Of a DNA stretch of 64,000 nt, positions 26,001 to 58,002 are shown one piece after another. Below the pieces are notes generated by a model. It was not told where the DNA came from and made no database searches. It saw nothing but the letters and a program-made list of their open reading frames with translations. The DNA is taken from positions 310,001 to 374,000 of IMG/VR virus record IMGVR_UViG_3300027749_002876. One strand, written 5' to 3'. Numbering within the stretch: the stretch's first letter is position 1; the number at the start of each line of letters is the position of its first letter. The position numbers were made by a program, and so were the translations under genes.

Positions 26001-26289
26001 TACCATAACTAACAGGATTCTGTAAATATGTTCCATAACCTGTCTTATCACCTGTACCCCCAGTCAATCCATAAAAAGGTGACATATAACTAACTGTAAT
26101 CCAACAGTTGCTATCAGAAGGATCTACACCTCCCATATCAGCAACATAAACTCGCAAACGACCACTTCGTATAGGATCAATATTATCTTTTACTACCCCA
26201 AACACAGGCACAGAACTAACTACTGCACCACCTGCACCTAATTTATCTGCGCTTGGTGCGCCTTTGGGTTTAAAGATATTATTTGCCAT
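23074..26289 (-). CDS. gp5: Baseplate hub/central spike gp5-like (Vgr OB-fold + beta-helix) with long Ala/Gly/Ser-rich C-terminal extension, 1071 aa
   Basis: GVVKDNIDPIRSGRLRVY...W....SPFYG...PPDLGTTVICIFINGD...YWIG OB-fold; GHSVVMDDG/GHQILMSDD and beta-helix repeats (DLNLHADNNINMHA). Confidence 0.85.
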   Translation of the reverse strand: MANNIFKPKGAPSADKLGAGGAVVSSVPVFGVVKDNIDPIRSGRLRVYVADMGGVDPSDSNCWITVSYMSPFYGLTGGTGDKTGYGTYLQNPVSYGMWNSPPDLGTTVICIFINGDPNYGYWIGCVPQPEALFMVPANGSTETVVTNSGEANSYGGAKKLPVTNINTNNNAINSSPAFFNEPKPVNSYLAGVLNQQGLIRDTIRGTIGTSAQRESPSRVGWGVNTPGRPIYEGGFTDETIADAATGEGQQSNLKITSRRVGHSVVMDDGDLLGRDQLVRIRSSLGHQILMSDDGQCLHIIHANGQSWIELGKEGTIDMYATNSVNIRTQGDLNLHADNNINMHAKKDFNLYGENVTINSDKKTDFRIGTDYSMQSLGKYTLKVGAGMSLASAGEASFASTAAAFVNGSKVNLNTGSAGLVPAEVKPITVVAHTDTLYDSTKGWAAAPGALFSIASRAPAHAPWSSANQGVDVKVDNNASANFPSPPSAAVTAVNAQVANTPNTPVTASVSATVPVTGAISKVLDKNVTTTMVGQVAAMAQSGPAAAATAIGASVVETATGKFAAVGKLAQSPQQMESAGILKPGSAVLIASLISQGKTVEEAMTANLFTGMPDAENLQAYIASTTSQVKTQVSTFQQAQTQLTQSGVMTGKESSGVVAGIITATATAGLSNTVNFMKTASGSLGKGISDVGSVVGKSVNGLIGSVTGSITSGNFAANLAESSIGGLSSIAGSLSGLAKGGIPGLSGIFDSAKGIAGSAFAAITKGFPALKAGVPQNLKQIADKAAADVQASGTEASDVAGVLKSAASNSGIDAVSIASGAASSAINGLDSVTKAVTTGVAAASNAASLAQNAVSSIGALLPGNASTGLSGLPGAQNAVATVINGAKGALNSIPGASSISGAISQVTASISTGNLAGGASSLIDKLKAPGASLQALASIGLSPALASKLNSSIASLSSGGAVQITLPVVGINTNDRTSLTSQLASVFGSSKIPLPNYNGNPATTGDTSSSDKIRDSLNEQYEKTQKLIAKVDEVRAARLAYSKAKNELPAGDPQLDELRNKWLALGEELKAL

Positions 26290-31197: not shown

Positions 31198-32103
31198 ATG
31201 TCCCTACCCTCACGCAAACCTGTCAACTATTTAAATAATAAAGACATTCTAAAAGAAATTCACGAAAGTAAAAACGCTTATTGCTACTTCACCGACCCAA
31301 GCTATCATCGCTATGATTTCATTGTAGACATGCCTCAATCTAGTATGGAAGACAGCTTAGAATATGCTTTCAAACCAGAAACTATTCAACAAGCAAAAGA
31401 AACACGTGCATTACGTCTTAGTTTAGAACAAGGGTCTAAAGATGCTGTTAGTCCGGATTCAATTTTAGTTACAGATTTAGTATTTCGTGTAATGACTTGG
31501 GATCACGTTCCGGTCGCACCAAAACAGCCACGTAAAACAGTTAAAAAGAAAACAGCGAAGGATATCTTTGATTTTGAAGAACCAGATCCAGACGAAATAT
31601 TTGCTGACTTAGAGGATAATACTACTAAAGCTGAAGTAGATGATATGGTTCATGTTAAGGTAAACTTTCCACCGTTCCAGCATTACAAAATTGATGAAAA
31701 TAATACATTCAAATGTGTAGGTAAAAGCCATTGGGACGGTGATTTAGAAACAGGTGTCTTTAATAAAGAACACGGCAAAATCACAAACAAACTTGCCCGT
31801 ATGTATATTATGATGTGCGAAAAATATGCAATGAAATATAATTGGCGCGGGTATACTTACAATGATGAGATGCGTAATAGTGCCATCTTACAATTAACAT
31901 ACGTTGGTTTACGTTTCAATGAAGCTAAAAGTGCAAACCCATTTGCTTACTACACAGCCGCTATCACTAATAGTTTCTGTAGAGTATTGAATACAGAAAA
32001 ACGTAATCAAAACATACGTGATGATATACTAGAAATCAATGGTCTCAATCCTAGTTGGTCACGACAGGGTATTGGGTCTAGTTCCACAGTATACGAAGAA
32101 TAA
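31198..32103 (+). CDS. gp55: Late-transcription sigma factor, gp55-like, 301 aa
   Basis: YLNNKDILKEI at the N-terminus; NWRGYTYNDEM...LRFNEAKSANPFAYYTAAITNSF.R.LN.EKRNQ is the gp55 core; GGAG RBS. Confidence 0.9.
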   Translation: MSLPSRKPVNYLNNKDILKEIHESKNAYCYFTDPSYHRYDFIVDMPQSSMEDSLEYAFKPETIQQAKETRALRLSLEQGSKDAVSPDSILVTDLVFRVMTWDHVPVAPKQPRKTVKKKTAKDIFDFEEPDPDEIFADLEDNTTKAEVDDMVHVKVNFPPFQHYKIDENNTFKCVGKSHWDGDLETGVFNKEHGKITNKLARMYIMMCEKYAMKYNWRGYTYNDEMRNSAILQLTYVGLRFNEAKSANPFAYYTAAITNSFCRVLNTEKRNQNIRDDILEINGLNPSWSRQGIGSSSTVYEE

Positions 32104-32117
32104 TTTAACCAAAGCCG

Positions 32118-45448: not shown

Positions 45449-46651
45449 ATGTCAAAAGTTCTATTAGAAAGCCGTTGGGACGAGACCAAGGAAGCTCTGT
45501 TAGAAGGCTTAAAGGGCACTCGCCGCTCAACTATGGGTGTTATCTTAGAAAATACTAAGAAACAACTACTTGCTGAATCTTCAGTAGGTACAACTACAGC
45601 TGGTAACATCGCTACACTAAACCGTGTGATTCTTCCAGTTATTCGTCGTGTCATGCCAACCGTTATCGCTAACGAATTGGTAGGTGTACAACCAATGACA
45701 GGACCAGTTGGTCAAATTCACACACTACGTGTACGTTATGCAAATAGCTTAGTGGATAACAGTGCCGCTCAAACTAGCGTTACAGCTGGTCAAGAAGCAT
45801 TGAGTCCATTCACAATTGCTCAGGCATATTCACGTCAGCCAAGTGGCGCCGCTGGTGATACAGCAACAGGCTACACTGGTAACAACACTGCTGCCTTAGA
45901 AGGCAACGGTGGTCGTCAAATCAGCGTACAAATCTTACGTCAAGCTGTTGAAGCTAAGTCACGTAAGTTGCAAGCACGTTGGACATTTGAGGCAGCACAA
46001 GATGCACAGAGTCAACATGGTATTGACGTTGAAGCAGAAATCATGGCAGCATTAGCACAAGAAATTACTGCTGAAATTGACCAAGAGATTCTATTGTCGT
46101 TAGCGACATTGGCATCTACTGAGTACACATTCAACCAAGCTACTGTATCAGGTACAGCTACTTACGTTGGTGACGAACACGCTGCCTTAGCTGTTCTAAT
46201 CAACCGTGTTGCTAACTTGATCGCCCAACGTACACGTCGTGGCGCAGGTAACTGGGCTGTTGTATCTCCAGCAAGTTTGACAGTATTGCAATCTGCAACT
46301 ACTTCAGCGTTTGCTCGTACAACAGAAGGTACATTCGAAGCTCCAACTAACACTAAGTTCGTTGGTACATTGAACGGTGCTATGCGTGTATTCGTTAACA
46401 GTTATGCTCCTGATACACAACCTGTATTGGTTGGTTATAAAGGTTCAAGCGAAACTGATGCAGCCGCATTCTATTGCCCATACATTCCATTAATGAGCAG
46501 TGGAGTTGTATTGGATCCATCAACATTCGAACCAGTCGTATCATTTATGACAAGGTACGGATACATCGAATTAACGAATACGGCCAGCTCATTTGGTAAC
46601 GCTGCCGATTACGTTGGAGAAATTGCGGTTCAGAACCTTACGTTTCAGTGA
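45449..46651 (+). CDS. gp23: Major capsid protein gp23, 400 aa
   Basis: VIRRVMPTVIANELVGVQPMTGPVGQIHTLRVRY, VEAKSRKLQARWTFEAAQD, FYCPYIPL, FMTRYG. Confidence 0.98.
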   Translation: MSKVLLESRWDETKEALLEGLKGTRRSTMGVILENTKKQLLAESSVGTTTAGNIATLNRVILPVIRRVMPTVIANELVGVQPMTGPVGQIHTLRVRYANSLVDNSAAQTSVTAGQEALSPFTIAQAYSRQPSGAAGDTATGYTGNNTAALEGNGGRQISVQILRQAVEAKSRKLQARWTFEAAQDAQSQHGIDVEAEIMAALAQEITAEIDQEILLSLATLASTEYTFNQATVSGTATYVGDEHAALAVLINRVANLIAQRTRRGAGNWAVVSPASLTVLQSATTSAFARTTEGTFEAPTNTKFVGTLNGAMRVFVNSYAPDTQPVLVGYKGSSETDAAAFYCPYIPLMSSGVVLDPSTFEPVVSFMTRYGYIELTNTASSFGNAADYVGEIAVQNLTFQ

Positions 46652-46775: not shown

Positions 46776-47756
46776 ATGAAACATTTTATATACAAGACAA
46801 CTCACACAAACGGAAAATACTACATAGGTAGACATAGCACTACTAACCTTGAAGATGGATATCTAGGTTCAGGAAAGTGGGTATCACAAATCAAAAAGAA
46901 GGATAAGTTAGTCCGAGAAATAGTTGAGTTTGTAGATTCATTTGAGGAACTAATAATAAAAGAAGATGAATATTTAGCAGAACATTACGGTAAACCTAAC
47001 TGTATGAATATGAGTAATAAAAGCACAGGCGCAGCCACTGGATTAGCTAATCCTATGACACGTGATGAAGTTAAATCAAAATTTCAAGGGGACAATCATT
47101 GGTCCCATAAGAATCCTGAAATGTTTGCAGAAAAACTAGCAGGAGATAATCATTGGATGAATAAAGATCCAGAACGAAAAGAAGATTTTATAAAAAACAA
47201 CCCCAACCTAGATGGTAGAAACGCAAAGGCAGCAATGAAAAACGGTAAACACAATAGTATCACTAACAATCCAAGTACTATCAACGCACTAAATGGTACT
47301 CATCATTGGCAGAATGGTAAAGCGCCAAACTATGAAGGTAAGCTAAACAAGAAGTTGATTGAAGAAGGTCGTCATAACTTTTTAGGACCAGACACAAATC
47401 AAAAACGAATAGATGAGGGAACACACAACTTTGTAGGTTCAGCCGCAAATCTAAAGATGTTAGCAGAAGGTAAACATCCATCACAACGAAAGATGACTTG
47501 TAGTTGTGGTAAGACTGTTAGTAGTAGTATGTATAAAAGATGGCACGGAGATAACTGTAAAATGAAAGTAATAAAAATGAATTCAAGACAATATGAAAAA
47601 ATGCGTAATGAACAACTACGAGAAACAATGGAGAAAGCAGGCATAACAGATTATACAAATGTATGTCTAAGTGCAGACCAACAAGAATATGAAGTTACAC
47701 TAAAAGATGGAACAGAAGTTATTATTCCTAGTGGATTACCCTATCATTATGATTGA
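46776..47756 (+). mobile_element. Free-standing GIY-YIG (Seg-like) homing endonuclease gene, 326 aa
   Basis: FIYKTT...KYYIGRH......YLGSG; repeated G-x-H-(N/H/P)-(F/W) DNA-binding-like units; terminal CSCGK...RWHGDNCK motif. Confidence 0.9.
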
Positions 47757-47800: not shown

Positions 47801-47824
47801 AAGCACTATTCGTAGTGCTTTTTT
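47801..47824 (+). terminator. Rho-independent terminator with UUCG loop
   Basis: AAGCACTA-TTCG-TAGTGCTT-TTTT. Confidence 0.88.
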
Positions 47825-47868
47825 GTTATCTACATTATTTTGCTAAATACTTCAAAGGAAAACATACT

Positions 47869-48822
47869 ATGGAAATTACTGGTGGAATGACATTTTTAGG
47901 TGGTATGACGGTAACACAACAACCCCCACCCACAAATAAAGCTATTTTTGGATTTGGTGATACTGGGTCAGTAACAGCAATAACAAACCTAGTCAGCAAC
48001 ACTGGTGTAGTTGCTAATGATACAACAGGGGTTGGTACTGCTAGAAGCGGAGTAGCGGCCGCTGGTTATGGAACAGATAAAGCTATATTTGGTTATGGAT
48101 TAACCAGTATAAGTGTATCAATAACTAATCTTGTTTCTAACACAGGTGTGGTTGGTAATGATGTTACTGGAGTTGGTACTACTAGACAACAATTAGCAGC
48201 CGCAGGTTATGGCACTGATAAAGCTATATTTGGTTATGGTTATAATAATAGCAGTGGTGCTAAATCAACGACCAACTTAGTATCAAACACTGGTGTTGTT
48301 GCCACAGATACAACAGGTGTAGGTACTGCTAGATATGGAATAGCAGCATCCGGGTACGGTAGCTCCGGACAAGCAATATTTGGATATGGATATGCACCAG
48401 CACTCACACCAAGCTATACATCAATAACTAACCTAGTATCAAATACCGGTGTAGTAGCTACTGATACCACAGGTGTTGGTACTGTAAGACAATTTCCTGC
48501 TGCCGCAGGCTATGGCACAGATAAAGCTATATTTGGATATGGTCAAATTGGCAACCCGACCTACGCTTATGTATCGATGACTAATCTAGTCTCAAATACT
48601 GGTGTTGTTGCAACAGATACGACAGGTGTCGGCACGATTAGAACTGGGCTGGCAGCAGCCATATACGGTAGTTCTGGGCAAGCAATATTTGGATATGGTA
48701 CAAATGCTAGTAATCAATCAATAACCAACTTAGTAAGTAATACTGGTGTCGTTGCTACTGATACGACTGGGGTTGGCACTGCTAGAAGTTATCTTGCAGC
48801 CGCAAATTACGGACTAGCATAA
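47869..48822 (+). CDS. Six-bladed Kelch-like beta-propeller protein 1 (~317 aa)
   Basis: Six repeats of AIFGYG-loop-TNLVSNTGVVATDTTGVGTAR-xxx-AAxGYG. Start reassigned to ATG 47869 (AAGGA RBS, GCTAAATA promoter at 47842-47849). Confidence 0.8.
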   Translation: MEITGGMTFLGGMTVTQQPPPTNKAIFGFGDTGSVTAITNLVSNTGVVANDTTGVGTARSGVAAAGYGTDKAIFGYGLTSISVSITNLVSNTGVVGNDVTGVGTTRQQLAAAGYGTDKAIFGYGYNNSSGAKSTTNLVSNTGVVATDTTGVGTARYGIAASGYGSSGQAIFGYGYAPALTPSYTSITNLVSNTGVVATDTTGVGTVRQFPAAAGYGTDKAIFGYGQIGNPTYAYVSMTNLVSNTGVVATDTTGVGTIRTGLAAAIYGSSGQAIFGYGTNASNQSITNLVSNTGVVATDTTGVGTARSYLAAANYGLA

Positions 48823-48840
48823 AATAAAAGGAAATATATT

Positions 48841-49767
48841 ATGGACTTTACAGGTGGACTAACATTTACAGGTGGATTGAGTGTAACTCCTCAACCCCCG
48901 CCTTCAAGCAAGGCTATATTTGGATATGGTAATAACGATTCCGTTGATTTATCAATGACTAACTTAGTATCAAACACCGGTGTTGTTGCTACTGACACAA
49001 CGGGCGTTGGTACTGCAAGACAAAATTTATCGGCAACAACCTATGGTACTGATAAAGCTATTTTTGGTTATGGTGATGTTTCGGGTTCATACTCATCATT
49101 AACTAACCTAGTAAGTAATACCGGTGTTGTTGCTACTAATACTGCAGGTGTTGGCACTGCTAGAGGATATCGTTCGGCCGCAGTTTATGGTTCAAGTGGT
49201 CAAGCTATGTTTATTTATGGAGTTAATAATAACTCGATTAATTTGGTTAGTAACACAGGTGTGGTGTCTACAGACTCCGCAGGAGCAGGCTCTGGTAGAG
49301 CATCTACTTCAGCTGCCGGCTACGGCACAGACAAAGCTATTATTGGATTTGGATGGGACGGTAGTAGTGGTTATTTTTCAACAACCAATCTAGTATCAAA
49401 TACAGGTGTAGTAGCAGGTGATACTACCGGTGTAGCAACTGCTAGGGGATTTCTTTCAGCCGCAGGATATGGCACTGATAAAGCTATCTTTGGATATGGT
49501 CAAAGTAGTGGGTATTATTCAATAACTAACTTAGTAAGTAATACCGGTGTTATGGCTACTGACACTGCAGGAGTAGGTACTGCTAGAAGTAAGCTATCAG
49601 CCGCAATATATGACGTAGATAAAGCTATATTTGGATATGGTGATAAACCAGGTGGATTAACATCATTAACCAACAAAGTATCAAATACGGGCATTGTTGC
49701 TAGTGACACTACTGGAGTAGGCACTGCTAGAAAAGGATCGGCAGCGGCAGGTTACGGTTACGCATAA
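48841..49767 (+). CDS. Six-bladed Kelch-like beta-propeller protein 2 (308 aa)
   Basis: Six copies of the same repeat; MDFTGGLTFTGGLSVTPQPPP leader; AAGGA RBS. Confidence 0.8.
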   Translation: MDFTGGLTFTGGLSVTPQPPPSSKAIFGYGNNDSVDLSMTNLVSNTGVVATDTTGVGTARQNLSATTYGTDKAIFGYGDVSGSYSSLTNLVSNTGVVATNTAGVGTARGYRSAAVYGSSGQAMFIYGVNNNSINLVSNTGVVSTDSAGAGSGRASTSAAGYGTDKAIIGFGWDGSSGYFSTTNLVSNTGVVAGDTTGVATARGFLSAAGYGTDKAIFGYGQSSGYYSITNLVSNTGVMATDTAGVGTARSKLSAAIYDVDKAIFGYGDKPGGLTSLTNKVSNTGIVASDTTGVGTARKGSAAAGYGYA

Positions 49768-49800
49768 TCTAACAAACACAAAACAAAAGGATAATATATT

Positions 49801-50736
49801 ATGGATTTTACAGGTGGATTAACATTTACAGGTGGATTGAGTGTAACTCCTCAACCTCCTCCCCCTTCAAGCAAGGCTATATTTGGTTATGGATACATTA
49901 CATCAATAACTAATCTAGTATCAAATACAGGTGTAGTTGCTACTGATACTGCAGGTGTTGGTACTGCCAGAGGTGAACTTGCTGCCGCAGGATATGGAAC
50001 AGATAAAGCTATTTTTGGATTTGGCTTTGCATATGCCTGGATAAATACGACCAACCGAGTAAGTAATACAGGTGTTGTTGCCACTGATGGACAATCTGCT
50101 GGTACTGGCAGAAATATACTTGCTGCCGCAGGATATGGAACAGATAAAGCTATTTTTGGATTTGGCTTTTATTATAATAGCGGTGAGGGGTCTATCACCA
50201 CTAACGTGACCAACCTAGTAAGTAATACAGGTGTGGTTGCTAATAATACCACAGGTGTTGGTAGTGCTAGAAACAGCCTTGCTGCCACAGGTTATGGAAC
50301 TGATAAAGCTATGTTTGGATATGGCGGTGGAGGTGGTCCAACTAACTTAGTATCAAATACGGGTGTTGTAGCTACTGATGTATCCAGAGTTGGTACTGAT
50401 AGAGCATTACTCGCAGCCGCAGTCTATGGCACTGATAAAGCTATCTTTGGATATGGTACCGGTACCGCTTTATTTTCAGTGACCAACAAAGTATCAAACA
50501 CGGGTGTAGTAGCTACTGATACCACTGGTGTGGGTACTGCTAGATACGGATTAGCAGCCGCTGGGTACGGTGTTGATACTGCTATATTTGGATATGGAAA
50601 TATCGACCGTTTAAACGAAACCCTACCGGTATCAATGACCAATCTAGTATCAAACACCGGTGTAGTTGCTACAGACACAACTGGTGTCGGTACTGCTAGA
50701 TTTAAATTAGCAGCCGCAAGTTACGGCTTAGCATAA
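49801..50736 (+). CDS. Six-bladed Kelch-like beta-propeller protein 3 (311 aa)
   Basis: Six copies of the repeat; leader identical to protein 2 up to the proline linker. Confidence 0.8.
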   Translation: MDFTGGLTFTGGLSVTPQPPPPSSKAIFGYGYITSITNLVSNTGVVATDTAGVGTARGELAAAGYGTDKAIFGFGFAYAWINTTNRVSNTGVVATDGQSAGTGRNILAAAGYGTDKAIFGFGFYYNSGEGSITTNVTNLVSNTGVVANNTTGVGSARNSLAATGYGTDKAMFGYGGGGGPTNLVSNTGVVATDVSRVGTDRALLAAAVYGTDKAIFGYGTGTALFSVTNKVSNTGVVATDTTGVGTARYGLAAAGYGVDTAIFGYGNIDRLNETLPVSMTNLVSNTGVVATDTTGVGTARFKLAAASYGLA

Positions 50737-50799
50737 ACAAACAAATCAAAGTATATACACAGCCTTTTTTTGATAAATAATAGCAAAGGATAATACATT

Positions 50800-51735
50800 A
50801 TGGAAATTACTGGTGGAATGACATTTAGTGGTGGTATGGTTGTGACACAGCAACCTCCTCCCCCTTCAAATAAAGCTATTTTTGGATATGGTCTTATTAC
50901 CGCGGCGGTAACAGCAATAACCAATCTAGTATCAAATACAGGCGTTGTTGCTACTGATACAACTGGTGTTGGAACTACTAGACAAAATCTAGCGGCCGCG
51001 GGCTATGGCACTAACAAAGCTATATTTGGTTATGGTCAACCTAGTGGGATGACAAATATAACCAATCTAGTATCAAATACAGGCGTTGTTGCTACTGATA
51101 CAGCAGGTGTAGGCACTGCAAGACGCTTTCTTGCAGCCGCAGGTTATGGAAGTGATAAAGCTATATTTGGATACGGAGGACCTGATGGTGGTTATTATTC
51201 ACTAACCAACCTAGTAACAAATACTGGTGTTGTTGGCAATGATGTCACAGGTGTAGGCACCGGTCGATATGGATTAACAGCCTCAGTGTATGGTACCGAT
51301 AAGGCCATATTTGGATATGGGTTTAATGGTTCAGCAATGACAACAACAACTAACCTAGTATCAAATACGGGTGTAGTGTCTACTGATACTGCAGGTGCCG
51401 GCACAGCCAGATATCAGCTAGCAGCCGCAGGGTATGGAACTGATAAAGCTATATTTGGCTATGGAACCACTGACCAGACGAATGGTTTATCAATTACTAA
51501 TCTAGTAAGTAACACAGGTGTAGTTGCTACTAATACAACAGGTGTTGGAACTGCTAGATGGGGTCTTGCAGCCGCAAGTTATGGTGTTGATACTGCTATA
51601 TTTGGATATGGAAATGGTCCATCTTTTGTATCAATGACCAATAAAGTATCAAACACCGGTGTAGTAGCAACGGATACGACAGGAGTTGGTACTGCTAGAA
51701 GCCAACTTGCAGCCTCAAGTTACGGTTACGCATAA
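50800..51735 (+). CDS. Six-bladed Kelch-like beta-propeller protein 4 (311 aa)
   Basis: Six copies of the repeat; MEITGGMTF leader like protein 1; own late promoter GATAAATA (50772-50779). Confidence 0.8.
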   Translation: MEITGGMTFSGGMVVTQQPPPPSNKAIFGYGLITAAVTAITNLVSNTGVVATDTTGVGTTRQNLAAAGYGTNKAIFGYGQPSGMTNITNLVSNTGVVATDTAGVGTARRFLAAAGYGSDKAIFGYGGPDGGYYSLTNLVTNTGVVGNDVTGVGTGRYGLTASVYGTDKAIFGYGFNGSAMTTTTNLVSNTGVVSTDTAGAGTARYQLAAAGYGTDKAIFGYGTTDQTNGLSITNLVSNTGVVATNTTGVGTARWGLAAASYGVDTAIFGYGNGPSFVSMTNKVSNTGVVATDTTGVGTARSQLAASSYGYA

Positions 51736-51753: not shown

Positions 51754-51776
51754 AAAGGCTCTACAGAGCCTTTTTT
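51754..51776 (+). terminator. Rho-independent terminator closing the propeller array
   Basis: AAAGGCTCT-AC-AGAGCCTTTTTT. Confidence 0.8.
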
Positions 51777-51808: not shown

Positions 51809-52186
51809 ATGATGATACACGCTCCAATCTCAATCGGTGAACTAATAGATAAAATCACTATATTAAAAATCAAGTCTATCTTAATTGTAGATACAATCAA
51901 ACTTAAAAACATAGAACAAGAACTACAACTATTAGAAGAACTAAAAGATAGTCTTAATTTAGATATTGACACACTTGAAGAACTACAGTCTAAGCTTTAT
52001 GGTGTAAACTTAGAGTTATGGCACATTGAGAACTATAAACGAGAATGTGAAAAGAATCAAACTTTTGATGGTAAATTCATTGACTCGGCACGACAAGTAT
52101 ATCTTAAAAACGATTTACGTGCTGAAATCAAACATAGTATCAACACAATGTTTGGTAGCACTATCGTTGAAGAAAAAAGCTATTAA
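51809..52186 (+). CDS. Conserved phage hypothetical protein (DUF6165-like), ~125 aa
   Basis: PISIGELIDKITILKIK...NLELWHIE...RE.E...F...ARQVYLKND.RAEIK. Start at 51809 or 51812, after TATAAT (51800-51805). Confidence 0.65.
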   Translation: MMIHAPISIGELIDKITILKIKSILIVDTIKLKNIEQELQLLEELKDSLNLDIDTLEELQSKLYGVNLELWHIENYKRECEKNQTFDGKFIDSARQVYLKNDLRAEIKHSINTMFGSTIVEEKSY

Positions 52187-52548
52187 ATTGTTAAATCAGT
52201 ATCAATAGTTATATCTAAAATACTCTTACGCTTTTCTTTTAGTTTCTTTTGGTACACTCTATTACAATTGGCACACAATGTTTTAAGATTACGTTTATCT
52301 TTATTCTTCTTGTCACCGTCTTTATATACAATGTCTAATTGACATTTATCTTCTGGTATAAAACCACACTTCTCACACTTGTCTTTCTTCTGTAACAAGT
52401 AACCATACGTGCTGTTATATGCACCTTTAGCACAATCAACACAATACTTGTGCCACTTGGTAAAGCCATGTTTACTCACACCGTTAGGTTTTGCTAATGA
52501 TACTCTACAATGAGAACATAGGGGTCTGTTTGGCTGTCGTGTAAGCAT
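52183..52548 (-). CDS. Zn-finger protein with degenerate HNH-like domain, 121 aa
   Basis: CSHC, HKYCVDC, CEKC...QLDIVYKDG...NLKTLCANCNR; HNH-like scaffold lacking the catalytic His. Confidence 0.7.
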   Translation of the reverse strand: MLTRQPNRPLCSHCRVSLAKPNGVSKHGFTKWHKYCVDCAKGAYNSTYGYLLQKKDKCEKCGFIPEDKCQLDIVYKDGDKKNKDKRNLKTLCANCNRVYQKKLKEKRKSILDITIDTDLTI

Positions 52549-52644: not shown

Positions 52645-55600
52645 ATGGCATTTGAACCTTTCGGTTTAGTCGGTGGTGTAACAGTAGGAATACCACCAAT
52701 ATTGGTAATAGACAGTAACGGCAATGTAACTTCTAACCGTGGTAACATTGCGAACCTATCTACGGCAGTTATTACTTCATCAGGTAATATTACTGCCCCG
52801 TTCTTTATTGGTAATGTCGTTGGAAATGTATCTGGAAATTTCGTAGTTCCTGGCACAAATACCAGTGTTATCTTTAACCAAGAAGGTAATGCAGGGGCCA
52901 GTGATAATCTACAGTTTAACTATTCTACAAATGTATTAAGTTTAACGGGTAATCTAACTGTTACTAATATTTTAACAGATAATTATCTATACGCTAACGG
53001 TGCTCCGTACGTATTTGCGGCACAAGCGTCCGGAACTAATACACAGATACAATTCAATACAGCTGGATTACTAGATGCTAGCGCAAACTTAACATTTAAT
53101 AATAGTACTCAAACATTTGCTACGAATAATATTTCTGCTACTACAGCGGTAATTACTACGATTCAATCAGCCAATGTAACAGCTACCGGTAATGTAGTAG
53201 CCGCAAATGTTATTGCTAATTTTATTGGTAATTTATCTAATGCTAATAGTGTTTCAGCTAACTATTTTACTGGCGTACTAACAACAAATGCACAACCTAA
53301 CATTACCAGTGTTGGTACATTATCAGGATTAACACTAGCAGGGAACATTATTCCAGCCGCTGATAATCTATATAATTTGGGTAGCAATGTAGCTCGCTGG
53401 AACGATTTATACTTAAGTGGCAATACTATCTATTTAGGTAATGCTACGATAGAAGCAAATAGTACAGCTTTAATTTTCACTAATCCAAATGGTTCTAATT
53501 ATGTATTTGGTGGAAATGATTTCTCAATAACCGGAAATATATCAGCCGGCGGCAATTTAAGTATAGGGAACATATCTGCTGGTAACTTAGTATCAGCTAA
53601 TTTTCTAACAGGTAGACTAACTACTGAATCACAACCTAATATTACTACAGTTGGAGTATTGGGTAATTTATCAGTAGCTGGTAATATCAATACTGGTAAC
53701 ATCAGTGCTGTCACTAGAGTTACAGCAAATCAAATATCTGGACTATTAATTACAGGTTATCAACCAAATGTTACCAGTGTTGGTACATTAGCATCATTGA
53801 ATGTAACTGGTAATATAACCACTACCAGTGGTGTATTTATTGGTAATGGTAGTGGACTATCTCAAATAGTTGCAGCCAACATTGTTGGATCTGTACCAAA
53901 TGCCGCTTATGCTAGTAATGCAGGTTTTGCTACACAGGCTGCACAGTCCGATTTAGCAAGTGTAGCCAATATTGCTAGTGTAGCTAATACAGCAACAACT
54001 GCGGGAACTGTTACAACTAACGCACAACCTAACATTACAAGTGTTGGCACATTAACTACATTAAATGTTACAGGTAATGTCAATGCTAATAATTTTGTAG
54101 GTAATTTTGTAGGTAATATTACCAGTGCAAATTTTGCATATTATGCAGGCAACGTTACTGTAGCTTCTCAACCCAATATTACAAGTGTTGGTACATTAAC
54201 TTCATTAGCTGTAAATGGACCCATAACAGCCGCAAATATCACTGCTAACACAGGTAGATTTACTGGTAATGGTAGTGGACTATCTCAATTACAGGCCTCA
54301 AATATTGTTGGTACTGTTGCTAATGCAACATATGCGGTGACAGCCGGAACAACAACAACTGCCGGTACTGTTACTACAAATGCACAGTCTAATATTACTT
54401 CTGTTGGTACACTAACATCACTGGCGGTAACTGGAAACATTGCTGGTGGAAATATAGCTGGTGGAAATTTAGTTTCTGCTACATACTTTACTGGAACAAT
54501 TTTAACTAGCTCACAACCCAATATTACTAATGTTGGAACACTATCATTATTAAATGTAACTGGAAATGTAACAGCCGCAAATATTACTGCCAGTACTGGT
54601 AGATTTGCAGGTAATGGCAGTGGATTAACAAACTTATCTGGGGCAAATGTAGTTGGTACTGTTGCTAATGCAACATATGCATTAACAGCTGGGTTTACTA
54701 CAACAGCCGGAACAGTAACAGATAATGCACAACCCAATATCACTTCAGTTGGTACACTACTATCACTAGCTGTAAGTGGAAATATTACTGGTTTAAATGT
54801 AGCTGGTGGTAATTTAGTTTCTGCTAATTATGTAACCGGAACATTAACAACTCAGGCTCAACCAAATATTACGTCAGTTGGCACACTTTCATTATTAAAT
54901 GTAACTGGAAACGTAACATCAGCAAATATTACAGTTACTACTGGTAGATTTGCAGGTAATGGTAGTGGTTTATCTCAACTTTCTGGGGCAAATGTAGTTG
55001 GTGATGTAGCTAATGCAACATATGCAACAAATGCAGGTAGTTCAACTACTGCAGGCACAGTAACAACTAATGCACAACCTAACATTACAAGTGTTGGTAC
55101 ATTAACATCATTAGATGTAACTGGAAATATTACTGGTACAAATGTAACTGGTGCTAACTTAGTTTCTGCTAATTTCTTAACCGGTACATTAACAACAAAT
55201 TCTCAACCTAACATCACTTCAGTTGGAACATTAACTTCACTTGCTGTAAGTGGAACTATTACAGCCGCAAATATTACTGCTACTACTGGTAAATTCACAG
55301 GTAATGGTAGAGGATTATCACAATTAACAGGATCTAACGTTATTGGCACAGTGGCCAATGCGACATATGCACTTAATGCAGGTAATTCAATTACATCTAA
55401 TACTGTAATTGATAACGCACAACCCAATATTACGTCAGTTGGAACATTAACTTCATTGATAGTAAGTGGAAATATTACTGGAGCTAATATTACTGGTGGT
55501 AATTTAGTTTCTGCTAATTTCTTAACCGGTACATTAACAACAAGTGCTCAATCTAACATTACAAGTACAGGTACATTATCATTATTAAACGTAAGTGGTA

Positions 55601-58002
55601 ATATTACAGCTACAAACATTACTGCTAATACTGGTAGATTTGCGGGTAATGGTAGTGGACTAAGTCAATTAACAGGTGCTAACGTTTTAGGTACCGTGGC
55701 TAATGCAACATTTGCAGTATCAGCTGGATCATCAAATACGTCCGGTACTGTAACAACCAATACTCAACCTAACATTACAAGTGTTGGTACACTAACTACT
55801 TTAACAAGTTCAGGTAATATTACAGCACCGTATTTTATTGGTAATGTTGTTGGAAATATATCTGGGAATTTTGTAGTTCCCGGTACAAACACCAGTGTTA
55901 TCTTTAATCAAGAAGGCAATGCAGGCGCAAGTGATGCGCTTAGGTTTAACTATTCTAGCAATGTTTTAACAGCAAATGGTAATATTATTGCTACTTATTT
56001 TATTGGTAATGGTAGTGGATTATCACAACTAACTGGTTCTAATGTAGTTGGAACAGTAGCCAATGCAACGTTCTCGGTATCAGCAGGGTCATCAAATACA
56101 GCAGGTACTGTTACTACAAATGCACAGCCTAACATTACTTCAGTTGGAACATTAACATCATTAGTTGTAACTGGAAATATTACTGGTGCTAATGTAGCAG
56201 GTGGTAATTTAGTTTCTGCTAATTATGTTACTGGTACACTAACAACAAATTATCAACCTAACATTACAAGTGTTGGTACATTGACTGGTTTGTCAAGTTC
56301 AGGTAATATCACAGCTCCATACTTCTTTGGTAATTTAATAGGTAATATAGATGATGCTAATTATGCATACTATGCAGGAAATGTAGTTAATCCATTACAG
56401 CCAAATATTACAACAGTGGGCATATTAACTAGTTTAAGTGTATCTGGTAATATTATAGGTGGTAACTTAGTAAGTGCTAATTTCTTAACTGGTACACTTA
56501 CTACACAAACACAAGCTAATATACATACAGTTGGTAATTTAGAATTCTTAAATATTGACACAAGTTTACCAGGAGCCAATGGTAATATAACTTTTAATGG
56601 TAGTATGAGTGGTACTGGCCCGCAAAGTGATATTGATATTACCGGTGACCTTTATGTTAGTAACATCTATTCTACAATTGTAGCCGGAGTACTTAGTACA
56701 AATGAACAACCAAATGTAACATTAGTTGGTACATTAACAGAATTGACAGTACGAGGTCCTGTTGATTTAGGTAGTGTATCTAATTTAACAATTACAGGTG
56801 GTAATGCAAATTATGTATTGTCTACTAATGGTTCAGGTAATTTATCTTGGCAACCAGCAGGTGGTGGATCAGCCGGCGGAACTAACACTCAAGTGCAGTT
56901 TAATAATCTAGGTTTATTAGATGGTAATTCATCATTTACATTTAATAATACAACTAAGACACTAACTGTATTAGGAAATATTACATCAAATAGTACAATT
57001 CAAAGTAGTAGATTTATATCAAATGTAGCAAATGGAACTAGTCCTTTTGTAGTTACATCTACTACAAAAGTAGCAAATTTAAGTGTAGAAACTGCAAATA
57101 CTGCAACATTTGCAACCAGTTCAACAAATTCAAATGTTGCATTAACTGTAGCAAATGCATCACAACCTAACATTACTTCAGTTGGTACATTAACTGCACT
57201 AAATGTTAATGGTACAGGAAGTATTACAGGTAATATACGAGTAGGTAATTTAGATACAAATGGTACAATAGTATCAACTAATTCAACTGTTGTTGGAAAT
57301 GCAAATGTTAATGGTACTTTACAAGTAGGTAGTGTTGGACAATTAAGAGTGTTAGGTACTGTTAACACTGATGGATCTTCTAATGTGAATTTGGGCAATG
57401 TTTCAAATCTTCATATTAGCGGTGGAATAAACGGATACGTATTAAGCACTGACGGTGCAGGTAACTTAAGTTGGGCAACTGGTGGCGGTGGCGGTGGCAA
57501 CGGAGTACCTGGTGGGTCAAACACACAAGTACAGTATAATGACGGTGGTGTATTTGGCGGTAGTTCTTTCTTAACATTTAATGAAGTAACAAATACTTTA
57601 CAAGTAGCTGGTAATTTAGTAGCAAATAGCACTCAAGTTGGTGCCGGGATTTACAAATTTTCAACACAATATGTTTATTTTGCAACAACTACATCTACTG
57701 CATCCAGTCAAGTTTTATGGACTACTTTGGCATCAAATGTTTCAGGAGTAGACTTTCATATTATAGCAACAGATGTCACGGGTGCAACAAGACAGTCAGT
57801 TAAAATATCATCATTGTTATATGGAAATATTGTTGCTTTCAATGAATATGGTGGGTTACAAATAAATGGGGGAACTGGATCATTCTCAGTTGACTATAAT
57901 GCAGGTAATATTATTGTTCAACCAAGTGTACGATTGTTAGTTACTCCTGACTCGTCAAATTCAACAACTTACAAAATGACAATTACGGAGTATGCCCCAT
58001 GA
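52645..58002 (+). CDS. Long tail fibre-like protein with about 20 QPNITSVG repeats, 1785 aa
   Basis: G/N/T/A/S/V-rich repeats, NTQVQFN-type modules, globular C-terminal domain; late promoter 52611-52618. Confidence 0.85.
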   Translation: MAFEPFGLVGGVTVGIPPILVIDSNGNVTSNRGNIANLSTAVITSSGNITAPFFIGNVVGNVSGNFVVPGTNTSVIFNQEGNAGASDNLQFNYSTNVLSLTGNLTVTNILTDNYLYANGAPYVFAAQASGTNTQIQFNTAGLLDASANLTFNNSTQTFATNNISATTAVITTIQSANVTATGNVVAANVIANFIGNLSNANSVSANYFTGVLTTNAQPNITSVGTLSGLTLAGNIIPAADNLYNLGSNVARWNDLYLSGNTIYLGNATIEANSTALIFTNPNGSNYVFGGNDFSITGNISAGGNLSIGNISAGNLVSANFLTGRLTTESQPNITTVGVLGNLSVAGNINTGNISAVTRVTANQISGLLITGYQPNVTSVGTLASLNVTGNITTTSGVFIGNGSGLSQIVAANIVGSVPNAAYASNAGFATQAAQSDLASVANIASVANTATTAGTVTTNAQPNITSVGTLTTLNVTGNVNANNFVGNFVGNITSANFAYYAGNVTVASQPNITSVGTLTSLAVNGPITAANITANTGRFTGNGSGLSQLQASNIVGTVANATYAVTAGTTTTAGTVTTNAQSNITSVGTLTSLAVTGNIAGGNIAGGNLVSATYFTGTILTSSQPNITNVGTLSLLNVTGNVTAANITASTGRFAGNGSGLTNLSGANVVGTVANATYALTAGFTTTAGTVTDNAQPNITSVGTLLSLAVSGNITGLNVAGGNLVSANYVTGTLTTQAQPNITSVGTLSLLNVTGNVTSANITVTTGRFAGNGSGLSQLSGANVVGDVANATYATNAGSSTTAGTVTTNAQPNITSVGTLTSLDVTGNITGTNVTGANLVSANFLTGTLTTNSQPNITSVGTLTSLAVSGTITAANITATTGKFTGNGRGLSQLTGSNVIGTVANATYALNAGNSITSNTVIDNAQPNITSVGTLTSLIVSGNITGANITGGNLVSANFLTGTLTTSAQSNITSTGTLSLLNVSGNITATNITANTGRFAGNGSGLSQLTGANVLGTVANATFAVSAGSSNTSGTVTTNTQPNITSVGTLTTLTSSGNITAPYFIGNVVGNISGNFVVPGTNTSVIFNQEGNAGASDALRFNYSSNVLTANGNIIATYFIGNGSGLSQLTGSNVVGTVANATFSVSAGSSNTAGTVTTNAQPNITSVGTLTSLVVTGNITGANVAGGNLVSANYVTGTLTTNYQPNITSVGTLTGLSSSGNITAPYFFGNLIGNIDDANYAYYAGNVVNPLQPNITTVGILTSLSVSGNIIGGNLVSANFLTGTLTTQTQANIHTVGNLEFLNIDTSLPGANGNITFNGSMSGTGPQSDIDITGDLYVSNIYSTIVAGVLSTNEQPNVTLVGTLTELTVRGPVDLGSVSNLTITGGNANYVLSTNGSGNLSWQPAGGGSAGGTNTQVQFNNLGLLDGNSSFTFNNTTKTLTVLGNITSNSTIQSSRFISNVANGTSPFVVTSTTKVANLSVETANTATFATSSTNSNVALTVANASQPNITSVGTLTALNVNGTGSITGNIRVGNLDTNGTIVSTNSTVVGNANVNGTLQVGSVGQLRVLGTVNTDGSSNVNLGNVSNLHISGGINGYVLSTDGAGNLSWATGGGGGGNGVPGGSNTQVQYNDGGVFGGSSFLTFNEVTNTLQVAGNLVANSTQVGAGIYKFSTQYVYFATTTSTASSQVLWTTLASNVSGVDFHIIATDVTGATRQSVKISSLLYGNIVAFNEYGGLQINGGTGSFSVDYNAGNIIVQPSVRLLVTPDSSNSTTYKMTITEYAP

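What the first reader, a model, noticed from the sequence alone, without database searches (positions are those of the whole stretch)
47869..51735. Four-gene array of six-bladed Kelch-like propellers with a frozen scaffold and 24 unique hypervariable loops (antibody-like binder library)
Seen: four tandem late genes, each with exactly six ~45-50 aa repeats. The framework (AIFGYG / TNLVSNTGVVATDTTGVGTAR / AAxGYGTD) is almost invariant. The segment after GYG differs in all 24 repeats (5-14 aa, e.g. YAPALTPSYTSI, WDGSSGYFST, FYYNSGEGSITTNV, NIDRLNETLPVSM), and the three residues after the Arg also vary (SGV, QFP, GYR, WGL...). The loops are rich in Tyr/Ser/Gly/Asn/Thr. Established: Kelch blades follow R-x-x-h-AA...h-h-h-GG, and the loop after the GG plus the residues around the Arg form the same ligand-binding face. 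Inference: a diversifying virion-displayed adhesin/receptor-binding family, or a set of host-protein binders, built like an antibody or VLR scaffold and located next to the capsid gene.
Basis: partly seen in the sequence, partly recalled or inferred. Interest (0 to 1): 0.88.

Follow-up and report, generated by a model that had tools for sequence, protein, structure and literature searches.

The report
Phage Kelch-like propeller binder gene array
A huge (about 524 kb) uncultured phage carries four neighbouring late genes for small six-bladed propeller proteins whose scaffold is almost invariant and whose loops on one face all differ; they belong to a large, unnamed, phage-only family that most likely serves as virion-borne binding heads, but binding has not been shown.

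Summary
Four tandem + strand genes (47869-51735) each encode a ~23-aa N-terminal peptide, a Pro linker and six 44-53 aa repeats. All 24 post-GYG loops are unique. Only two residues after the invariant Arg vary, not three.

AlphaFold gives a confident six-bladed propeller (pLDDT 93.6). Its best solved matches are Kelch domains, but no Pfam, PHROG or NCBIfam model matches. Strand order puts both variable elements on one face and both chain ends on the other.

The family is large, phage-restricted and unnamed: 640 clusters at 50% identity, more than 522 IMG/VR loci, and 7 MAG loci in 185,579 genomes. Many relatives carry the propeller at the C-terminus of tail-fibre proteins. Sister phages (capsid protein 94% identical) hold 1-5 copies in the same slot, none above 72% identical to these.

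The framework is under strong purifying selection. The loops evolve near neutrality and are Tyr-rich with a fibre-like composition. There is no DGR, and six other assemblies show no variation in the parts of the array they cover.

Best reading: modular virion adhesin heads on a docking peptide. Function is inferred, not shown.

The parts
47801..47820 (+). Terminator-like hairpin plus T-run after the homing endonuclease gene. It marks the 5' border of the array's transcription unit.
   Evidence: 8-bp stem, then a T-run
47843..47849 (+). Late-promoter-like motif CTAAATA, 20 nt upstream of the g1 start codon.
   Evidence: The MTAAATA motif is depleted in the window (36 found, 65 expected). What remains sits mostly 15-40 nt upstream of structural genes in the correct orientation.
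47869..48822 (+). g1, 317 aa: N-terminal peptide (aa 1-23, 47869-47937), then a six-bladed Kelch-like propeller.
   Evidence: The RBS and start region are conserved across all four genes (repeat D6). The exact protein occurs on 7 contigs.
48841..49767 (+). g2, 308 aa: N-terminal peptide plus six blades. Blade 3 is degenerate.
49801..50736 (+). g3, 311 aa: N-terminal peptide plus six blades. This is the protein that was modelled.
50773..50779 (+). Second late-promoter-like motif ATAAATA, 21 nt upstream of g4.
50800..51735 (+). g4, 311 aa: N-terminal peptide plus six blades.
51754..51773 (.). Bidirectional terminator-like hairpin that closes the array.
46776..47756 (+). Homing endonuclease gene between the capsid gene and the array (phrog_314). 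I read its N-terminus as GIY-YIG-like from the sequence motif. Sister phages carry different endonuclease genes at this same border.
45449..46651 (+). Major capsid protein. This is the upstream anchor of the variable slot.
52645..58002 (+). 1785-aa repetitive fibre-like protein. This is the downstream anchor of the slot. Sister phages have 1573-2191 aa counterparts here.

Best explanation
Each of the four genes encodes a small 'lollipop' protein with three parts:
- a ~20-aa N-terminal docking peptide of the form M-x-[IF]-T-G-G-[ML]-T-F-x-G-G-[ML]-x-V-T;
- a short proline linker;
- a closed six-bladed Kelch-like beta-propeller.

In each blade, strand A is LAAAG, strand B is KAIFGYG, strand C is (S)ITNLV and strand D is GVVATD. 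The C-terminal strand A completes the first blade.

Both chain ends leave from the conserved face, which carries the YGTDK and SNTG turns. The opposite face is built from six hypervariable B-C loops and six hypervariable residue pairs just after the invariant Arg. That face therefore points away from the attachment point.

I propose that the docking peptide fixes the protein to a phage-specific site on the virion (fibre, baseplate, whisker or capsid; which one is unknown). The variable face then binds a host-surface ligand, most likely a glycan or an outer-surface protein. Several paralogs would give one virion several specificities.

Diversity arises over evolutionary time through gene turnover, recombination and fast loop evolution in a cargo slot between the capsid and fibre genes. 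It does not come from a programmed hypermutation system.

Shown: the anatomy, the fold, the selection pattern, the late-type regulatory signals, the phage-restricted distribution, and the fusion of relatives to tail-fibre modules.

Inferred: virion attachment, binding through the variable face, and the nature of the ligand.
For: Fold:
- AF2 on a 60-sequence alignment gives pLDDT 93.6 and pTM 0.89.
- Foldseek against the PDB returns Kelch domains at the top: 6hrl E=1.8e-13, TM 0.73/0.79, also KLHL12 and Keap1.
- Foldseek against BFVD returns uncharacterised uncultured-phage proteins at 50-64% identity, and Kelch-annotated jumbo-phage proteins.

Topology and face:
- In Keap1 the B-C and D-A loops form the ligand pocket (PMC12314335).

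Selection:
- Across the 24 blades the framework has pS 0.54 and pN 0.12.
- In pairs of intermediate divergence, framework omega is 0.08-0.2 and loop omega about 0.8-1.0, with indels. In one pair the post-Arg doublet has pN 0.50 against pS 0.05.
- Family-wide, the post-Arg positions carry 3.6-3.8 bits, and 1594 of 1699 loop cores are unique.
- The variable residues are 56% S/T/G/N/Y, like this phage's own fibres (53%) and unlike its head proteins (28%). Tyr is enriched fourfold, 9.8% against 2.5-2.7%.

Virion link:
- Relatives carry the propeller C-terminal to Mtd_N, fn3, Laminin_G_3 and tail-fibre PHROGs 5073, 6320, 366 and 8745.
- The array lies in the structural module: portal, protease, scaffold and capsid upstream, fibres downstream.
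- It has a late-promoter-like motif and is bracketed by terminators.
- In the related jumbo phage CBB, one of three Kelch-like proteins (CBB_552) was found in virions by mass spectrometry (PMC5259590). That protein is an analogue, not a detectable homologue.

Docking peptide:
- N-peptide identity is 0.56 within a locus and 0.35 between loci. Propeller identity is 0.70 and 0.71.
- The same peptide heads non-propeller proteins. One of them, a 668-aa protein in this same genome, carries baseplate-wedge and virion-structural modules.

Turnover and distribution:
- Sister phages (capsid protein 94% identical) carry 1, 3 or 5 copies in the same slot, and none is more than 72% identical to g1-g4.
- The family is phage-restricted: more than 522 IMG/VR loci against 7 MAG loci in 185,579 species genomes.
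Against: - There is no direct evidence that g1-g4 are in the virion or bind anything.
- They have no fibre shaft, and no recognised trimerisation or attachment domain.
- The first 23 residues are modelled without secondary structure, at pLDDT about 73.
- Other copies in the same genome sit among replication and nucleotide-metabolism genes. Position next to the capsid gene is therefore not a rule for this family.
- A loop omega of about 1 fits relaxed constraint as well as it fits diversifying selection.
- The extreme, family-wide conservation of every blade goes beyond what a Kelch fold needs. The conserved parts may themselves be functional sites (see rival 1).
- The one-face claim rests on strand topology. 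It was not measured on coordinates.
Confidence: 0.6

Rival explanations
1. Multivalent lectin whose binding sites lie in the conserved framework. Six near-identical sites between blades, built from the invariant Arg, Asp/Asn, Tyr and Thr of the 'frozen' scaffold, would bind one common sugar with avidity, as in the PLL, AAL and RSL propeller lectins. The variable loops would only modulate access or add secondary contacts. This still makes the protein a virion adhesin, but the paratope is the scaffold, not the loops.
For: - The only sequence hit in the PDB is the PLL2 propeller lectin.
- 9 of the 120 listed relatives carry a precomputed Pfam hit to PF26607. That accession was identified as Beta-prop_PLL, and graded 'faint', for one of them.
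- PLL lectins have near-identical blades with binding sites between the blades (PMC6943638).
- Every blade here is conserved far beyond what the fold requires, in 1701 blades.
- Synonymous divergence between blades is large, so selection is what maintains this conservation.
Against: - The PLL2 hit is not significant (E=0.06), and the one PF26607 hit that was inspected is graded 'faint'.
- PLL lectins have seven blades and use conserved Trp residues. This family has six blades and no conserved Trp.
- Foldseek ranks Kelch domains first, not lectin propellers.
- This model does not explain why the top-face positions are near maximal entropy and Tyr-rich.
Confidence: 0.2
2. Virion decoration or structural filler with no specific ligand. 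The propeller is a rigid module added to the capsid or fibres for stability or bulk, and the loops vary only because they are unconstrained.
For: - Loop omega is about 1, with frequent indels.
- The array is invariant across six other assemblies.
- Copy number ranges from 1 to 5 among close relatives, which suggests the genes are dispensable.
Against: - The variable residues are not compositionally neutral for a 35-40% GC genome. K+R+E+D is 9% against 27% in head proteins, and Tyr is enriched fourfold.
- In one gene pair the post-Arg doublet changed at 7 of 10 codons with almost no synonymous change.
- In long relatives the module sits at the distal C-terminal end of tail-fibre proteins, which is where receptor-binding domains sit.
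Confidence: 0.1
3. Intracellular or injected host-protein binders. Like eukaryotic and poxvirus Kelch proteins, the top face would capture host proteins during infection instead of acting on the outside of the virion.
For: - The Kelch fold is a classic peptide-binding adaptor.
- Some copies in this genome lie among non-structural genes.
- The proteins are small and soluble, with no shaft.
Against: - There is no BTB or other effector-coupling domain.
- The array has late-promoter-like signals and sits in a structural module.
- Relatives are fused to tail-fibre modules.
- The same N-terminal peptide is found on a protein with baseplate-wedge and virion-structural modules.
Confidence: 0.07
4. Enzymatic propeller, such as a sialidase-like depolymerase or a galactose-oxidase-like enzyme, acting on host surface polymers.
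For: - Six-bladed propellers include sialidases and endosialidase tailspikes (background knowledge).
- Some low-ranked BFVD hits are annotated as galactose oxidase or BNR repeat proteins.
Against: - The residues that line the top-face centre, where propeller enzymes have their active sites, are exactly the hypervariable ones.
- There is no Asp-box register and no match to any enzyme family.
- The best structural matches are non-enzymatic Kelch adaptors.
Confidence: 0.03

Closest known systems
Eukaryotic Kelch-repeat domains (Keap1, KLHL12/17/20)
   Same: Six four-stranded blades of about 47 aa. Each blade has a hydrophobic strand ending in G-x-G (Kelch has GG), an invariant Arg before strand A, and small residues in the inner strand. 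The B-C and D-A loops lie on one face. TM-scores are 0.7-0.8.
   Different: - No significant Kelch HMM match: the best Pfam Kelch E-value for g1-g4 is 0.12, and only 2 of the 60 aligned family sequences score E<=1.
- No conserved Trp and no BTB/BACK domains.
- The blades are about 75-90% identical to one another, whereas Kelch blades are normally very divergent.
- The family occurs only in phages.
Kelch-like proteins of jumbo phages (Pectobacterium phage CBB CBB_550/552/554, Burkholderia phage BcepSaruman, phiKZ-like virion proteins)
   Same: Propeller proteins in very large myophages. CBB belongs to the same Rak2-like capsid lineage. CBB_552 was found in the virion by mass spectrometry (PMC5259590). 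They resemble the model structurally.
   Different: No detectable sequence similarity: tblastn of g3 against 50,697 phage records finds nothing. Foldseek TM is only 0.43-0.74. A frozen scaffold with hypervariable loops, tandem arrays and a shared N-terminal peptide have not been described for them.
T-even gp38-type adhesins (conserved glycine-rich motifs framing hypervariable segments)
   Same: A conserved scaffold presents short hypervariable segments at the distal tip of a fibre. These segments set receptor specificity and differ between related phages. This is the closest functional analogy, and it rests on background knowledge that I did not test here.
   Different: The fold is entirely different (polyglycine-II sandwich against beta-propeller). 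gp38 is a single copy attached to gp37. Here there are multi-gene arrays with their own docking peptide.
DGR-diversified receptor-binding proteins (Bordetella phage BPP-1 Mtd)
   Same: A phage binding protein with an invariant scaffold and a variable ligand-binding surface. Some relatives even carry the Mtd_N domain at their N-terminus.
   Different: - No reverse transcriptase and no template/variable repeat pair.
- The loops vary in length.
- The fold is a propeller, not a C-type lectin.
- There is no variation within the population.
PLL-family seven-bladed propeller lectins of Photorhabdus
   Same: Highly self-similar blades, and a G-T-D-x-A-hydrophobic-aromatic hairpin motif. There are weak sequence hints.
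   Different: Seven blades, Trp-based sites between the blades, and a bacterial secreted lectin. The similarity is below significance.

Membership tests
Kelch-repeat beta-propeller (fold level) | Repeats of about 44-56 aa, each forming a four-stranded antiparallel blade, usually six closed into a propeller | tested here: met
   Repeat spacing is 44-53 aa. The AF2 model has pLDDT 93.6 with four strands per repeat. Foldseek's top 50 PDB hits are Kelch or Kelch-derived designs, with TM up to 0.79.
Kelch-repeat beta-propeller (Pfam Kelch families) | Significant match to a Kelch HMM (Kelch_1-6, PF24681) above the gathering score | tested here: not met
   The best hit is PF24681 at E=0.12, 12 bits against a cut-off of 50. 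Only 2 of 60 family members reach E<=1.
Kelch-repeat beta-propeller (sequence signature) | A hydrophobic strand followed by GG, then conserved Tyr and Trp, and Arg before strand A | tested here: inconclusive
   AIFGYG (G-Y-G in place of GG) and the invariant Arg are present. There is no conserved Trp. Tyr is conserved in the A-B turn (GYG), which is a different position.
Phage tail-fibre / receptor-binding protein distal domain | The domain sits at the C-terminal end of proteins that carry recognised fibre or shaft modules | tested here: met
   This holds for relatives: Mtd_N, fn3, Laminin_G_3, and tail-fibre PHROGs 5073, 6320, 366 and 8745 N-terminal to the propeller. g1-g4 themselves have only a ~23-aa peptide and a Pro linker.
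Phage tail-fibre / receptor-binding protein distal domain | Presence in the virion and binding to a host receptor | not testable with these tools
   The phage is uncultured and no proteomic or binding data exist. The only supports are a late-promoter-like motif and the analogy with CBB_552.
Diversity-generating retroelement target (Mtd-like) | A nearby reverse transcriptase and a template repeat that differs from the variable repeat at adenines, with a variable region of fixed length | tested here: not met
   None of the window ORFs that were scanned is a reverse transcriptase. The repeats within the array are only the 60-86% identical framework copies. Loops range from 6 to 15 aa.
PLL-type propeller lectin (PF26607 Beta-prop_PLL) | Seven blades, a significant sequence match, and conserved Trp in the inter-blade sugar sites | tested here: not met
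   Six blades. PDB profile search gives E=0.06. The one relative whose PF26607 hit was inspected has only a 'faint' hit. No conserved Trp. Sugar binding itself cannot be tested here.
Programmed or population-level hypervariable locus (antibody/VLR-like) | Sequence variation at the loops among members of one population or genome lineage | tested here: not met
   L001 has 0 mismatches in 15.6 kb and L002 has 2 in 20.9 kb, neither inside the array. Four more assemblies have 0 mismatches over g1 and part of g2.

The most novel reading that the evidence does not exclude
This phage-only family is a natural repeat-protein binder scaffold. It is a rigid six-bladed propeller whose top face acts as a paratope, made of six loops of free length plus twelve free residues. 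That paratope has been re-specified thousands of times across phages. Huge phages would mount panels of these heads on their virions through interchangeable N-terminal docking peptides. Arrays in a cargo slot flanked by homing endonucleases would be exchanged between phages to re-target adsorption. The position-specific synonymous codon conservation of the framework might also help recombination shuffle blades or loops.
Probability: 0.3. Interest if true: 0.8.

Novelty: new variant of a known kind. Interest (0 to 1): 0.6.

Why it matters
If the reading is right, three things follow.
- It names and explains a large family that currently has no model in Pfam, PHROGs or NCBIfam. The family has at least 640 clusters at 50% identity and thousands of metagenomic proteins, and it recurs in multi-copy arrays in huge freshwater and marine phages.
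- It gives a testable handle on how uncultured giant phages recognise hosts: a docking peptide plus exchangeable heads.
- It offers a compact, very confidently folding scaffold with a naturally validated map of which positions tolerate any sequence or length. That is the kind of information used to design binder scaffolds.

It also shows that the 'frozen scaffold, variable loops' look does not by itself mean an active diversification mechanism.

Tried and rejected
- Annotated phages: tblastn of g3 against 50,697 GenBank phage records found no match.
- Family libraries: Pfam, PHROGs and NCBIfam scans of g1-g4 gave nothing significant.
- DGR or programmed diversification: rejected. There is no reverse transcriptase and no template repeat, loop length varies, and six other assemblies are identical over the parts of the array they cover.
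- Recent tandem duplication or gene conversion as the cause of the invariant framework: rejected. Mean pS is 0.54. Codon identity at same-residue columns is 0.59 within a gene against 0.55 between unrelated loci. Blades show no positional orthology.
- Homology of the downstream 1031-aa protein to the ~1000-aa proteins that follow the capsid region in PA5oct and Vibrio phage 2.275.O: not found.
- Literature: searches for phage Kelch receptor-binding proteins, for huge-phage Kelch proteins, and for PF26607/PF26696 found nothing relevant beyond the CBB paper.
- PF26696 'PTL_trimer': I could not interpret it, because the Photorhabdus TNF-like lectin paper uses a different abbreviation.
- Mapping variability onto 3D coordinates: not possible, because the model coordinates are not exposed. 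I used strand topology instead.

Full report
**1. What is in the sequence**

Four + strand ORFs lie head to tail: g1 47869-48822 (317 aa), g2 48841-49767 (308 aa), g3 49801-50736 (311 aa) and g4 50800-51735 (311 aa). All four share a conserved ribosome-binding and start region (repeat D6).

Each protein has three parts:
- an N-terminal peptide of the form M-[ED]-[IF]-T-G-G-[ML]-T-F-x-G-G-[ML]-x-V-T;
- a Q/P-P-P-P linker;
- six repeats spaced 44-53 aa apart.

All 24 segments after AIFGYG differ. They are 6-15 aa long, or 3-12 aa if the semi-conserved S-[ILM]-T end is not counted.

After the invariant Arg only two residues are hypervariable (3.2 and 3.0 bits). The third is Leu in 18 of 24 blades. 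Of the 35 scored framework columns, 27 carry less than 1 bit and 10 of those are invariant. Apart from the two post-Arg positions, six more columns lie between 1.0 and 1.9 bits.

Two positions vary after the Arg, not three. A few blades (g2 blade 3, g3 blades 2 and 4) are degenerate.

**2. The invariant framework is not a duplication artefact**

- Framework DNA of the 24 blades is on average 76% identical. Pairwise pS is 0.54 and pN is 0.12.
- Blades show no positional orthology between the four genes. The four proteins are 60-70% identical to each other, which is no closer than they are to relatives from unrelated contigs.
- Codon identity at same-residue framework columns is 0.59 within a gene, 0.57 within a locus and 0.55 between loci. 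Concerted evolution is therefore at most weak, and purifying selection on the protein is what keeps the scaffold.
- One complication: codon choice is position-specific and conserved across the family. Examples are ACC, CTA, AGA, GCC, ATA and GGA at particular columns, each far above this phage's background usage. Overall codon identity is 0.55 against an expected 0.44. I cannot explain this.

**3. Fold**

AlphaFold2 on a 60-sequence alignment with g3 first gave pLDDT 93.6 and pTM 0.89.

Foldseek against the PDB returned Kelch domains and Kelch-derived designs in all top 50 places. The best was KLHL17 (6hrl) at E=1.8e-13 and TM 0.73/0.79.

By sequence, however, the family is not a Pfam Kelch member. 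The best E-value is 0.12, and only 2 of 60 members reach E<=1. It has no PHROG or NCBIfam model either.

The DSSP strand order gives this blade layout:
- strand A = LAAAG;
- A-B turn = YGTDK;
- strand B = AIFGYG;
- B-C loop = the variable segment;
- strand C = (S)ITNLV;
- C-D turn = SNTG;
- strand D = GVVATD;
- D-A loop = TTGVGTAR plus the two variable residues.

In an up-and-down four-stranded sheet the B-C and D-A loops lie on one face and the A-B and C-D turns on the other. Three consequences follow:
- Both variable elements share one face. In Keap1 that face forms the ligand pocket (PMC12314335).
- The chain enters at strand B of the first blade and ends after the last strand A. Both termini, and hence the Pro linker and N-peptide, leave from the conserved face.
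- The C-terminal strand A closes the first blade.

These points are inferred from topology. I had no access to the model coordinates.

**4. The family**

- An exhaustive HMMER search found 640 cluster representatives (50% identity) at E<=1e-3, and 251 at E<=1e-30.
- The word-indexed search found more than 2226 proteins. None carries an informative name.
- IMG/VR holds more than 522 confirmed loci. The 185,579 GTDB species genomes hold only 7, all on MAG contigs. The family is in effect phage-only.
- Across 1701 unique blades from 349 proteins the same columns are conserved and the same positions vary. The post-Arg positions carry 3.8 and 3.6 bits. Loop lengths mostly fall between 5 and 19 aa, and 1594 of 1699 loop cores are unique.
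- Among 83 unique propeller domains, 3148 of 3172 pairwise identities fall between 60 and 75%. That is the floor set by the invariant scaffold.

**5. Evidence on function**

(a) Domain position in relatives. Many relatives are long proteins with the propeller at the C-terminus. Upstream of it they carry Mtd_N, fn3 or Laminin_G_3 domains, tail-fibre PHROGs 5073, 6320, 366 and 8745, or baseplate-wedge/virion-structural modules. That is where receptor-binding heads sit.

(b) Genomic context. Upstream lie portal, a 276-aa protein, prohead protease, scaffold and major capsid protein, then a homing endonuclease gene. Downstream lie DUF6165, an HNH gene on the opposite strand, a 1785-aa repetitive fibre, a 1031-aa fibre-like protein and a 416-aa tail-fibre protein.

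(c) Regulation. A motif [AC]TAAATA resembles the T4 late promoter TATAAATA. It is depleted in the window overall (36 found, 65 expected). What remains sits mostly 15-40 nt upstream of structural genes in the right orientation, including g1 (47843) and g4 (50773). Terminator-like hairpins at 47801-47820 and 51754-51773 bracket the array.

(d) Selection pattern, measured in three gene pairs of intermediate divergence:
- Framework omega is 0.08-0.2.
- B-C loop omega is 0.8-1.0, with indels.
- In the L056/L057 pair the post-Arg doublet changed at 7 of 10 codons, with pN 0.50 against pS 0.05.

(e) Composition. The variable residues are 56% S/T/G/N/Y, like the phage's own fibres (53%) and unlike its head proteins (28%). 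They are poor in charged residues. Tyr is enriched fourfold.

(f) Precedent. In the Rak2-like jumbo phage CBB, one of three Kelch-like proteins (CBB_552) was found in virions by mass spectrometry (PMC5259590). Those proteins are structural analogues only.

**6. The N-terminal peptide**

Within a locus, N-peptides are 56% identical. Between loci they are 35% identical. The propellers are 70% and 71% identical in the same comparison.

The same kind of peptide also heads proteins with quite different bodies:
- a glycine-rich domain;
- an AGWFGGG...RITYA repeat protein;
- a 668-aa protein of this same genome with baseplate-wedge and virion-structural modules.

A short peptide that tracks the phage and not the head, on several head types, is what a docking or adaptor element should look like. 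The idea resembles the N-terminal tail of the adenovirus fibre (an analogy from background knowledge). The docking partner is unknown.

**7. Turnover, not hypermutation**

The window's capsid protein is 64-67% identical to those of Vibrio phage 2.275.O, PA5oct and other Rak2-like jumbo phages. The order portal, protease, scaffold, capsid is conserved, but what follows the capsid gene differs in each phage.

Sister contigs with 94% identical capsid protein (protease 92.5%, scaffold 83%) carry different contents in the same slot. In each case a different homing endonuclease gene sits at the capsid-proximal border. The propeller content is:
- one propeller gene (L074, L075);
- three propeller genes plus a protein with another head type (L044);
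- five propeller genes plus a glycine-rich-head protein (L017).

None of these is more than 72% identical to g1-g4.

The window most likely comes from IMG/VR contig UViG_3300027749_002876. That contig is 524,565 bp, the same length as the longest contig that carries g1. It has at least four more full copies and one truncated copy elsewhere, among DNA-polymerase-like and nucleotide-metabolism genes.

The array shows no variation within the population:
- L001 is identical over 15.6 kb.
- L002 has 2 mismatches in 20.9 kb, neither inside the array.
- Four further assemblies are identical over g1 and part of g2.

There is no reverse transcriptase and no template repeat. The 'library' therefore exists at the level of the phage pan-genome, not inside one population.

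**8. Interpretation**

- The virion-adhesin reading is the best explanation, but it rests on indirect evidence (confidence about 0.6).
- The 'antibody-like diversifying' wording overstates what is seen.
- The main rival is a multivalent lectin whose sites lie in the conserved inter-blade framework. The hints are a PLL2 hit at E=0.06, a 'faint' Beta-prop_PLL Pfam hit in the one relative inspected (nine listed relatives carry that Pfam accession), and blade conservation far beyond what the fold needs. This rival is compatible with a virion adhesin, but it moves the binding site.
- Decoration without a ligand, intracellular host-protein capture, and enzymatic activity are less likely, for the reasons given under each rival.

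**9. Novelty**

Propeller domains in phage receptor-binding proteins, and Kelch-like proteins in jumbo phages, are already known. So are conserved scaffolds that frame hypervariable segments, as in gp38 adhesins and DGR targets.

What I did not find described in the papers searched is this combination:
- a specific, very large, phage-only family with no model in Pfam, PHROGs or NCBIfam and no informative name in any source checked;
- near-identical blades combined with top-face positions at almost maximal entropy;
- multi-gene arrays in a cargo slot;
- a shared N-terminal docking peptide.

I rate it a new variant of a known kind, with interest 0.6.

Noticed in passing
window 1466-19135 (- strand): A single 5889-aa ORF. 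It matches phrog_10938 'virion structural protein' (E=7e-200 for the N-terminal half). It sits beside a baseplate wedge gene (19162-22533), a gp25-like gene (22582-23031) and a baseplate hub/lysozyme gene (23074-26289).
   Followed up: partly
window-wide; e.g. 37441, 40649, 42780, 47843, 50773, 52612, 58020 (+) and 22551, 23048, 31093, 37456 (-): The 7-mer [AC]TAAATA is under-represented: 36 copies against 65 expected, and all 100 shuffles have at least 36. The copies that remain cluster 15-40 nt upstream of structural genes in the correct orientation. This is probably the phage's late promoter, resembling T4 TATAAATA.
   Followed up: partly
window 47869-51735 and 405 blades in 41 other loci: Synonymous codon choice in the blade framework is position-specific and conserved across the family. 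Examples (family against background): Thr ACC 52% vs 7%, Leu CTA 51% vs 16%, Arg AGA 83% vs 25%, the middle Ala GCC 62% vs 13%, Gly GGA 65% vs 24%. The cause is unknown. Candidates are translation pacing for blade folding, homology for recombination, or residual ancestry.
   Followed up: partly
L017:13622-14470; L044:5710-6639; L065:1080-3086; L019:7720-8724; L061:9439-11391; L063:592-1497: The same kind of N-terminal peptide (M-x-[IV]-T-[IF]-x-G-G-[ILV]-[TS]-[FIL]-x-G-G...P-P) heads proteins with other bodies. These include a glycine-rich domain, an AGWFGGG...STVQRITYA repeat protein, and a 668-aa protein with baseplate-wedge/virion-structural modules. This suggests a general 'docking peptide plus exchangeable head' system.
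   Followed up: partly
window 46776-47756 (+) and 52183-52548 (-); L017:6925-7701; L074:2515-3258; L044:1299-2087: The slot between the capsid gene and the array holds a different homing-endonuclease-type gene in each sister phage. By sequence motif they look like GIY-YIG or HNH types. The window has a second gene, with weak HNH-endonuclease PHROG hits, at the 3' side of the array. These may drive the turnover of the cassette.
   Followed up: no
L027:8816-12130 and L065:3971-4921, 9995-10948 (same 524,565-bp IMG/VR contig): The same genome has at least four more full-length propeller genes and one truncated copy (123 aa, 2 blades). They lie outside the structural module, among genes I read by eye as DNA-polymerase-like, PP-loop ATPase-like and deaminase-like.
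   Followed up: partly
window 52645-58002: The 1785-aa fibre-like protein contains 19 copies of a P-N-I-T-S-V-G-like motif, with alternating 43/72-aa spacing. Its N-terminus (..F-G-L-V-G-G-V-T-V-G-I-P-P..) loosely resembles the propeller proteins' N-peptide. Sister phages have 1573-2191 aa counterparts that start with F-N-S-[LF]-G-G-Y-S-[IV]-G-I-P-P.
   Followed up: no
L089:303-4821: An unrelated metagenomic contig carries four tandem ~370-aa genes (376, 377, 366 and 375 aa). The queried gene is a family member, and it and its upstream neighbour carry a precomputed PF26696 'PTL_trimer' hit, apparently in the N-terminal extension. If all four are family members, tandem arrays are common and some members are probably trimeric. 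I did not confirm the other three genes.
   Followed up: no
window 45922 and 54543: These are the only two nucleotide differences between the window and a 20.9-kb stretch from another metagenome (L002). One lies in the capsid gene and one in the 1785-aa fibre gene. The population is very clonal.
   Followed up: no
window 32039-35238: A pair of recombination-nuclease genes resembling SbcD (Metallophos) and SbcC (phrog_77), plus a PDDEXK endonuclease gene (35272-35838), sit between the baseplate and tail/head gene blocks.
   Followed up: no
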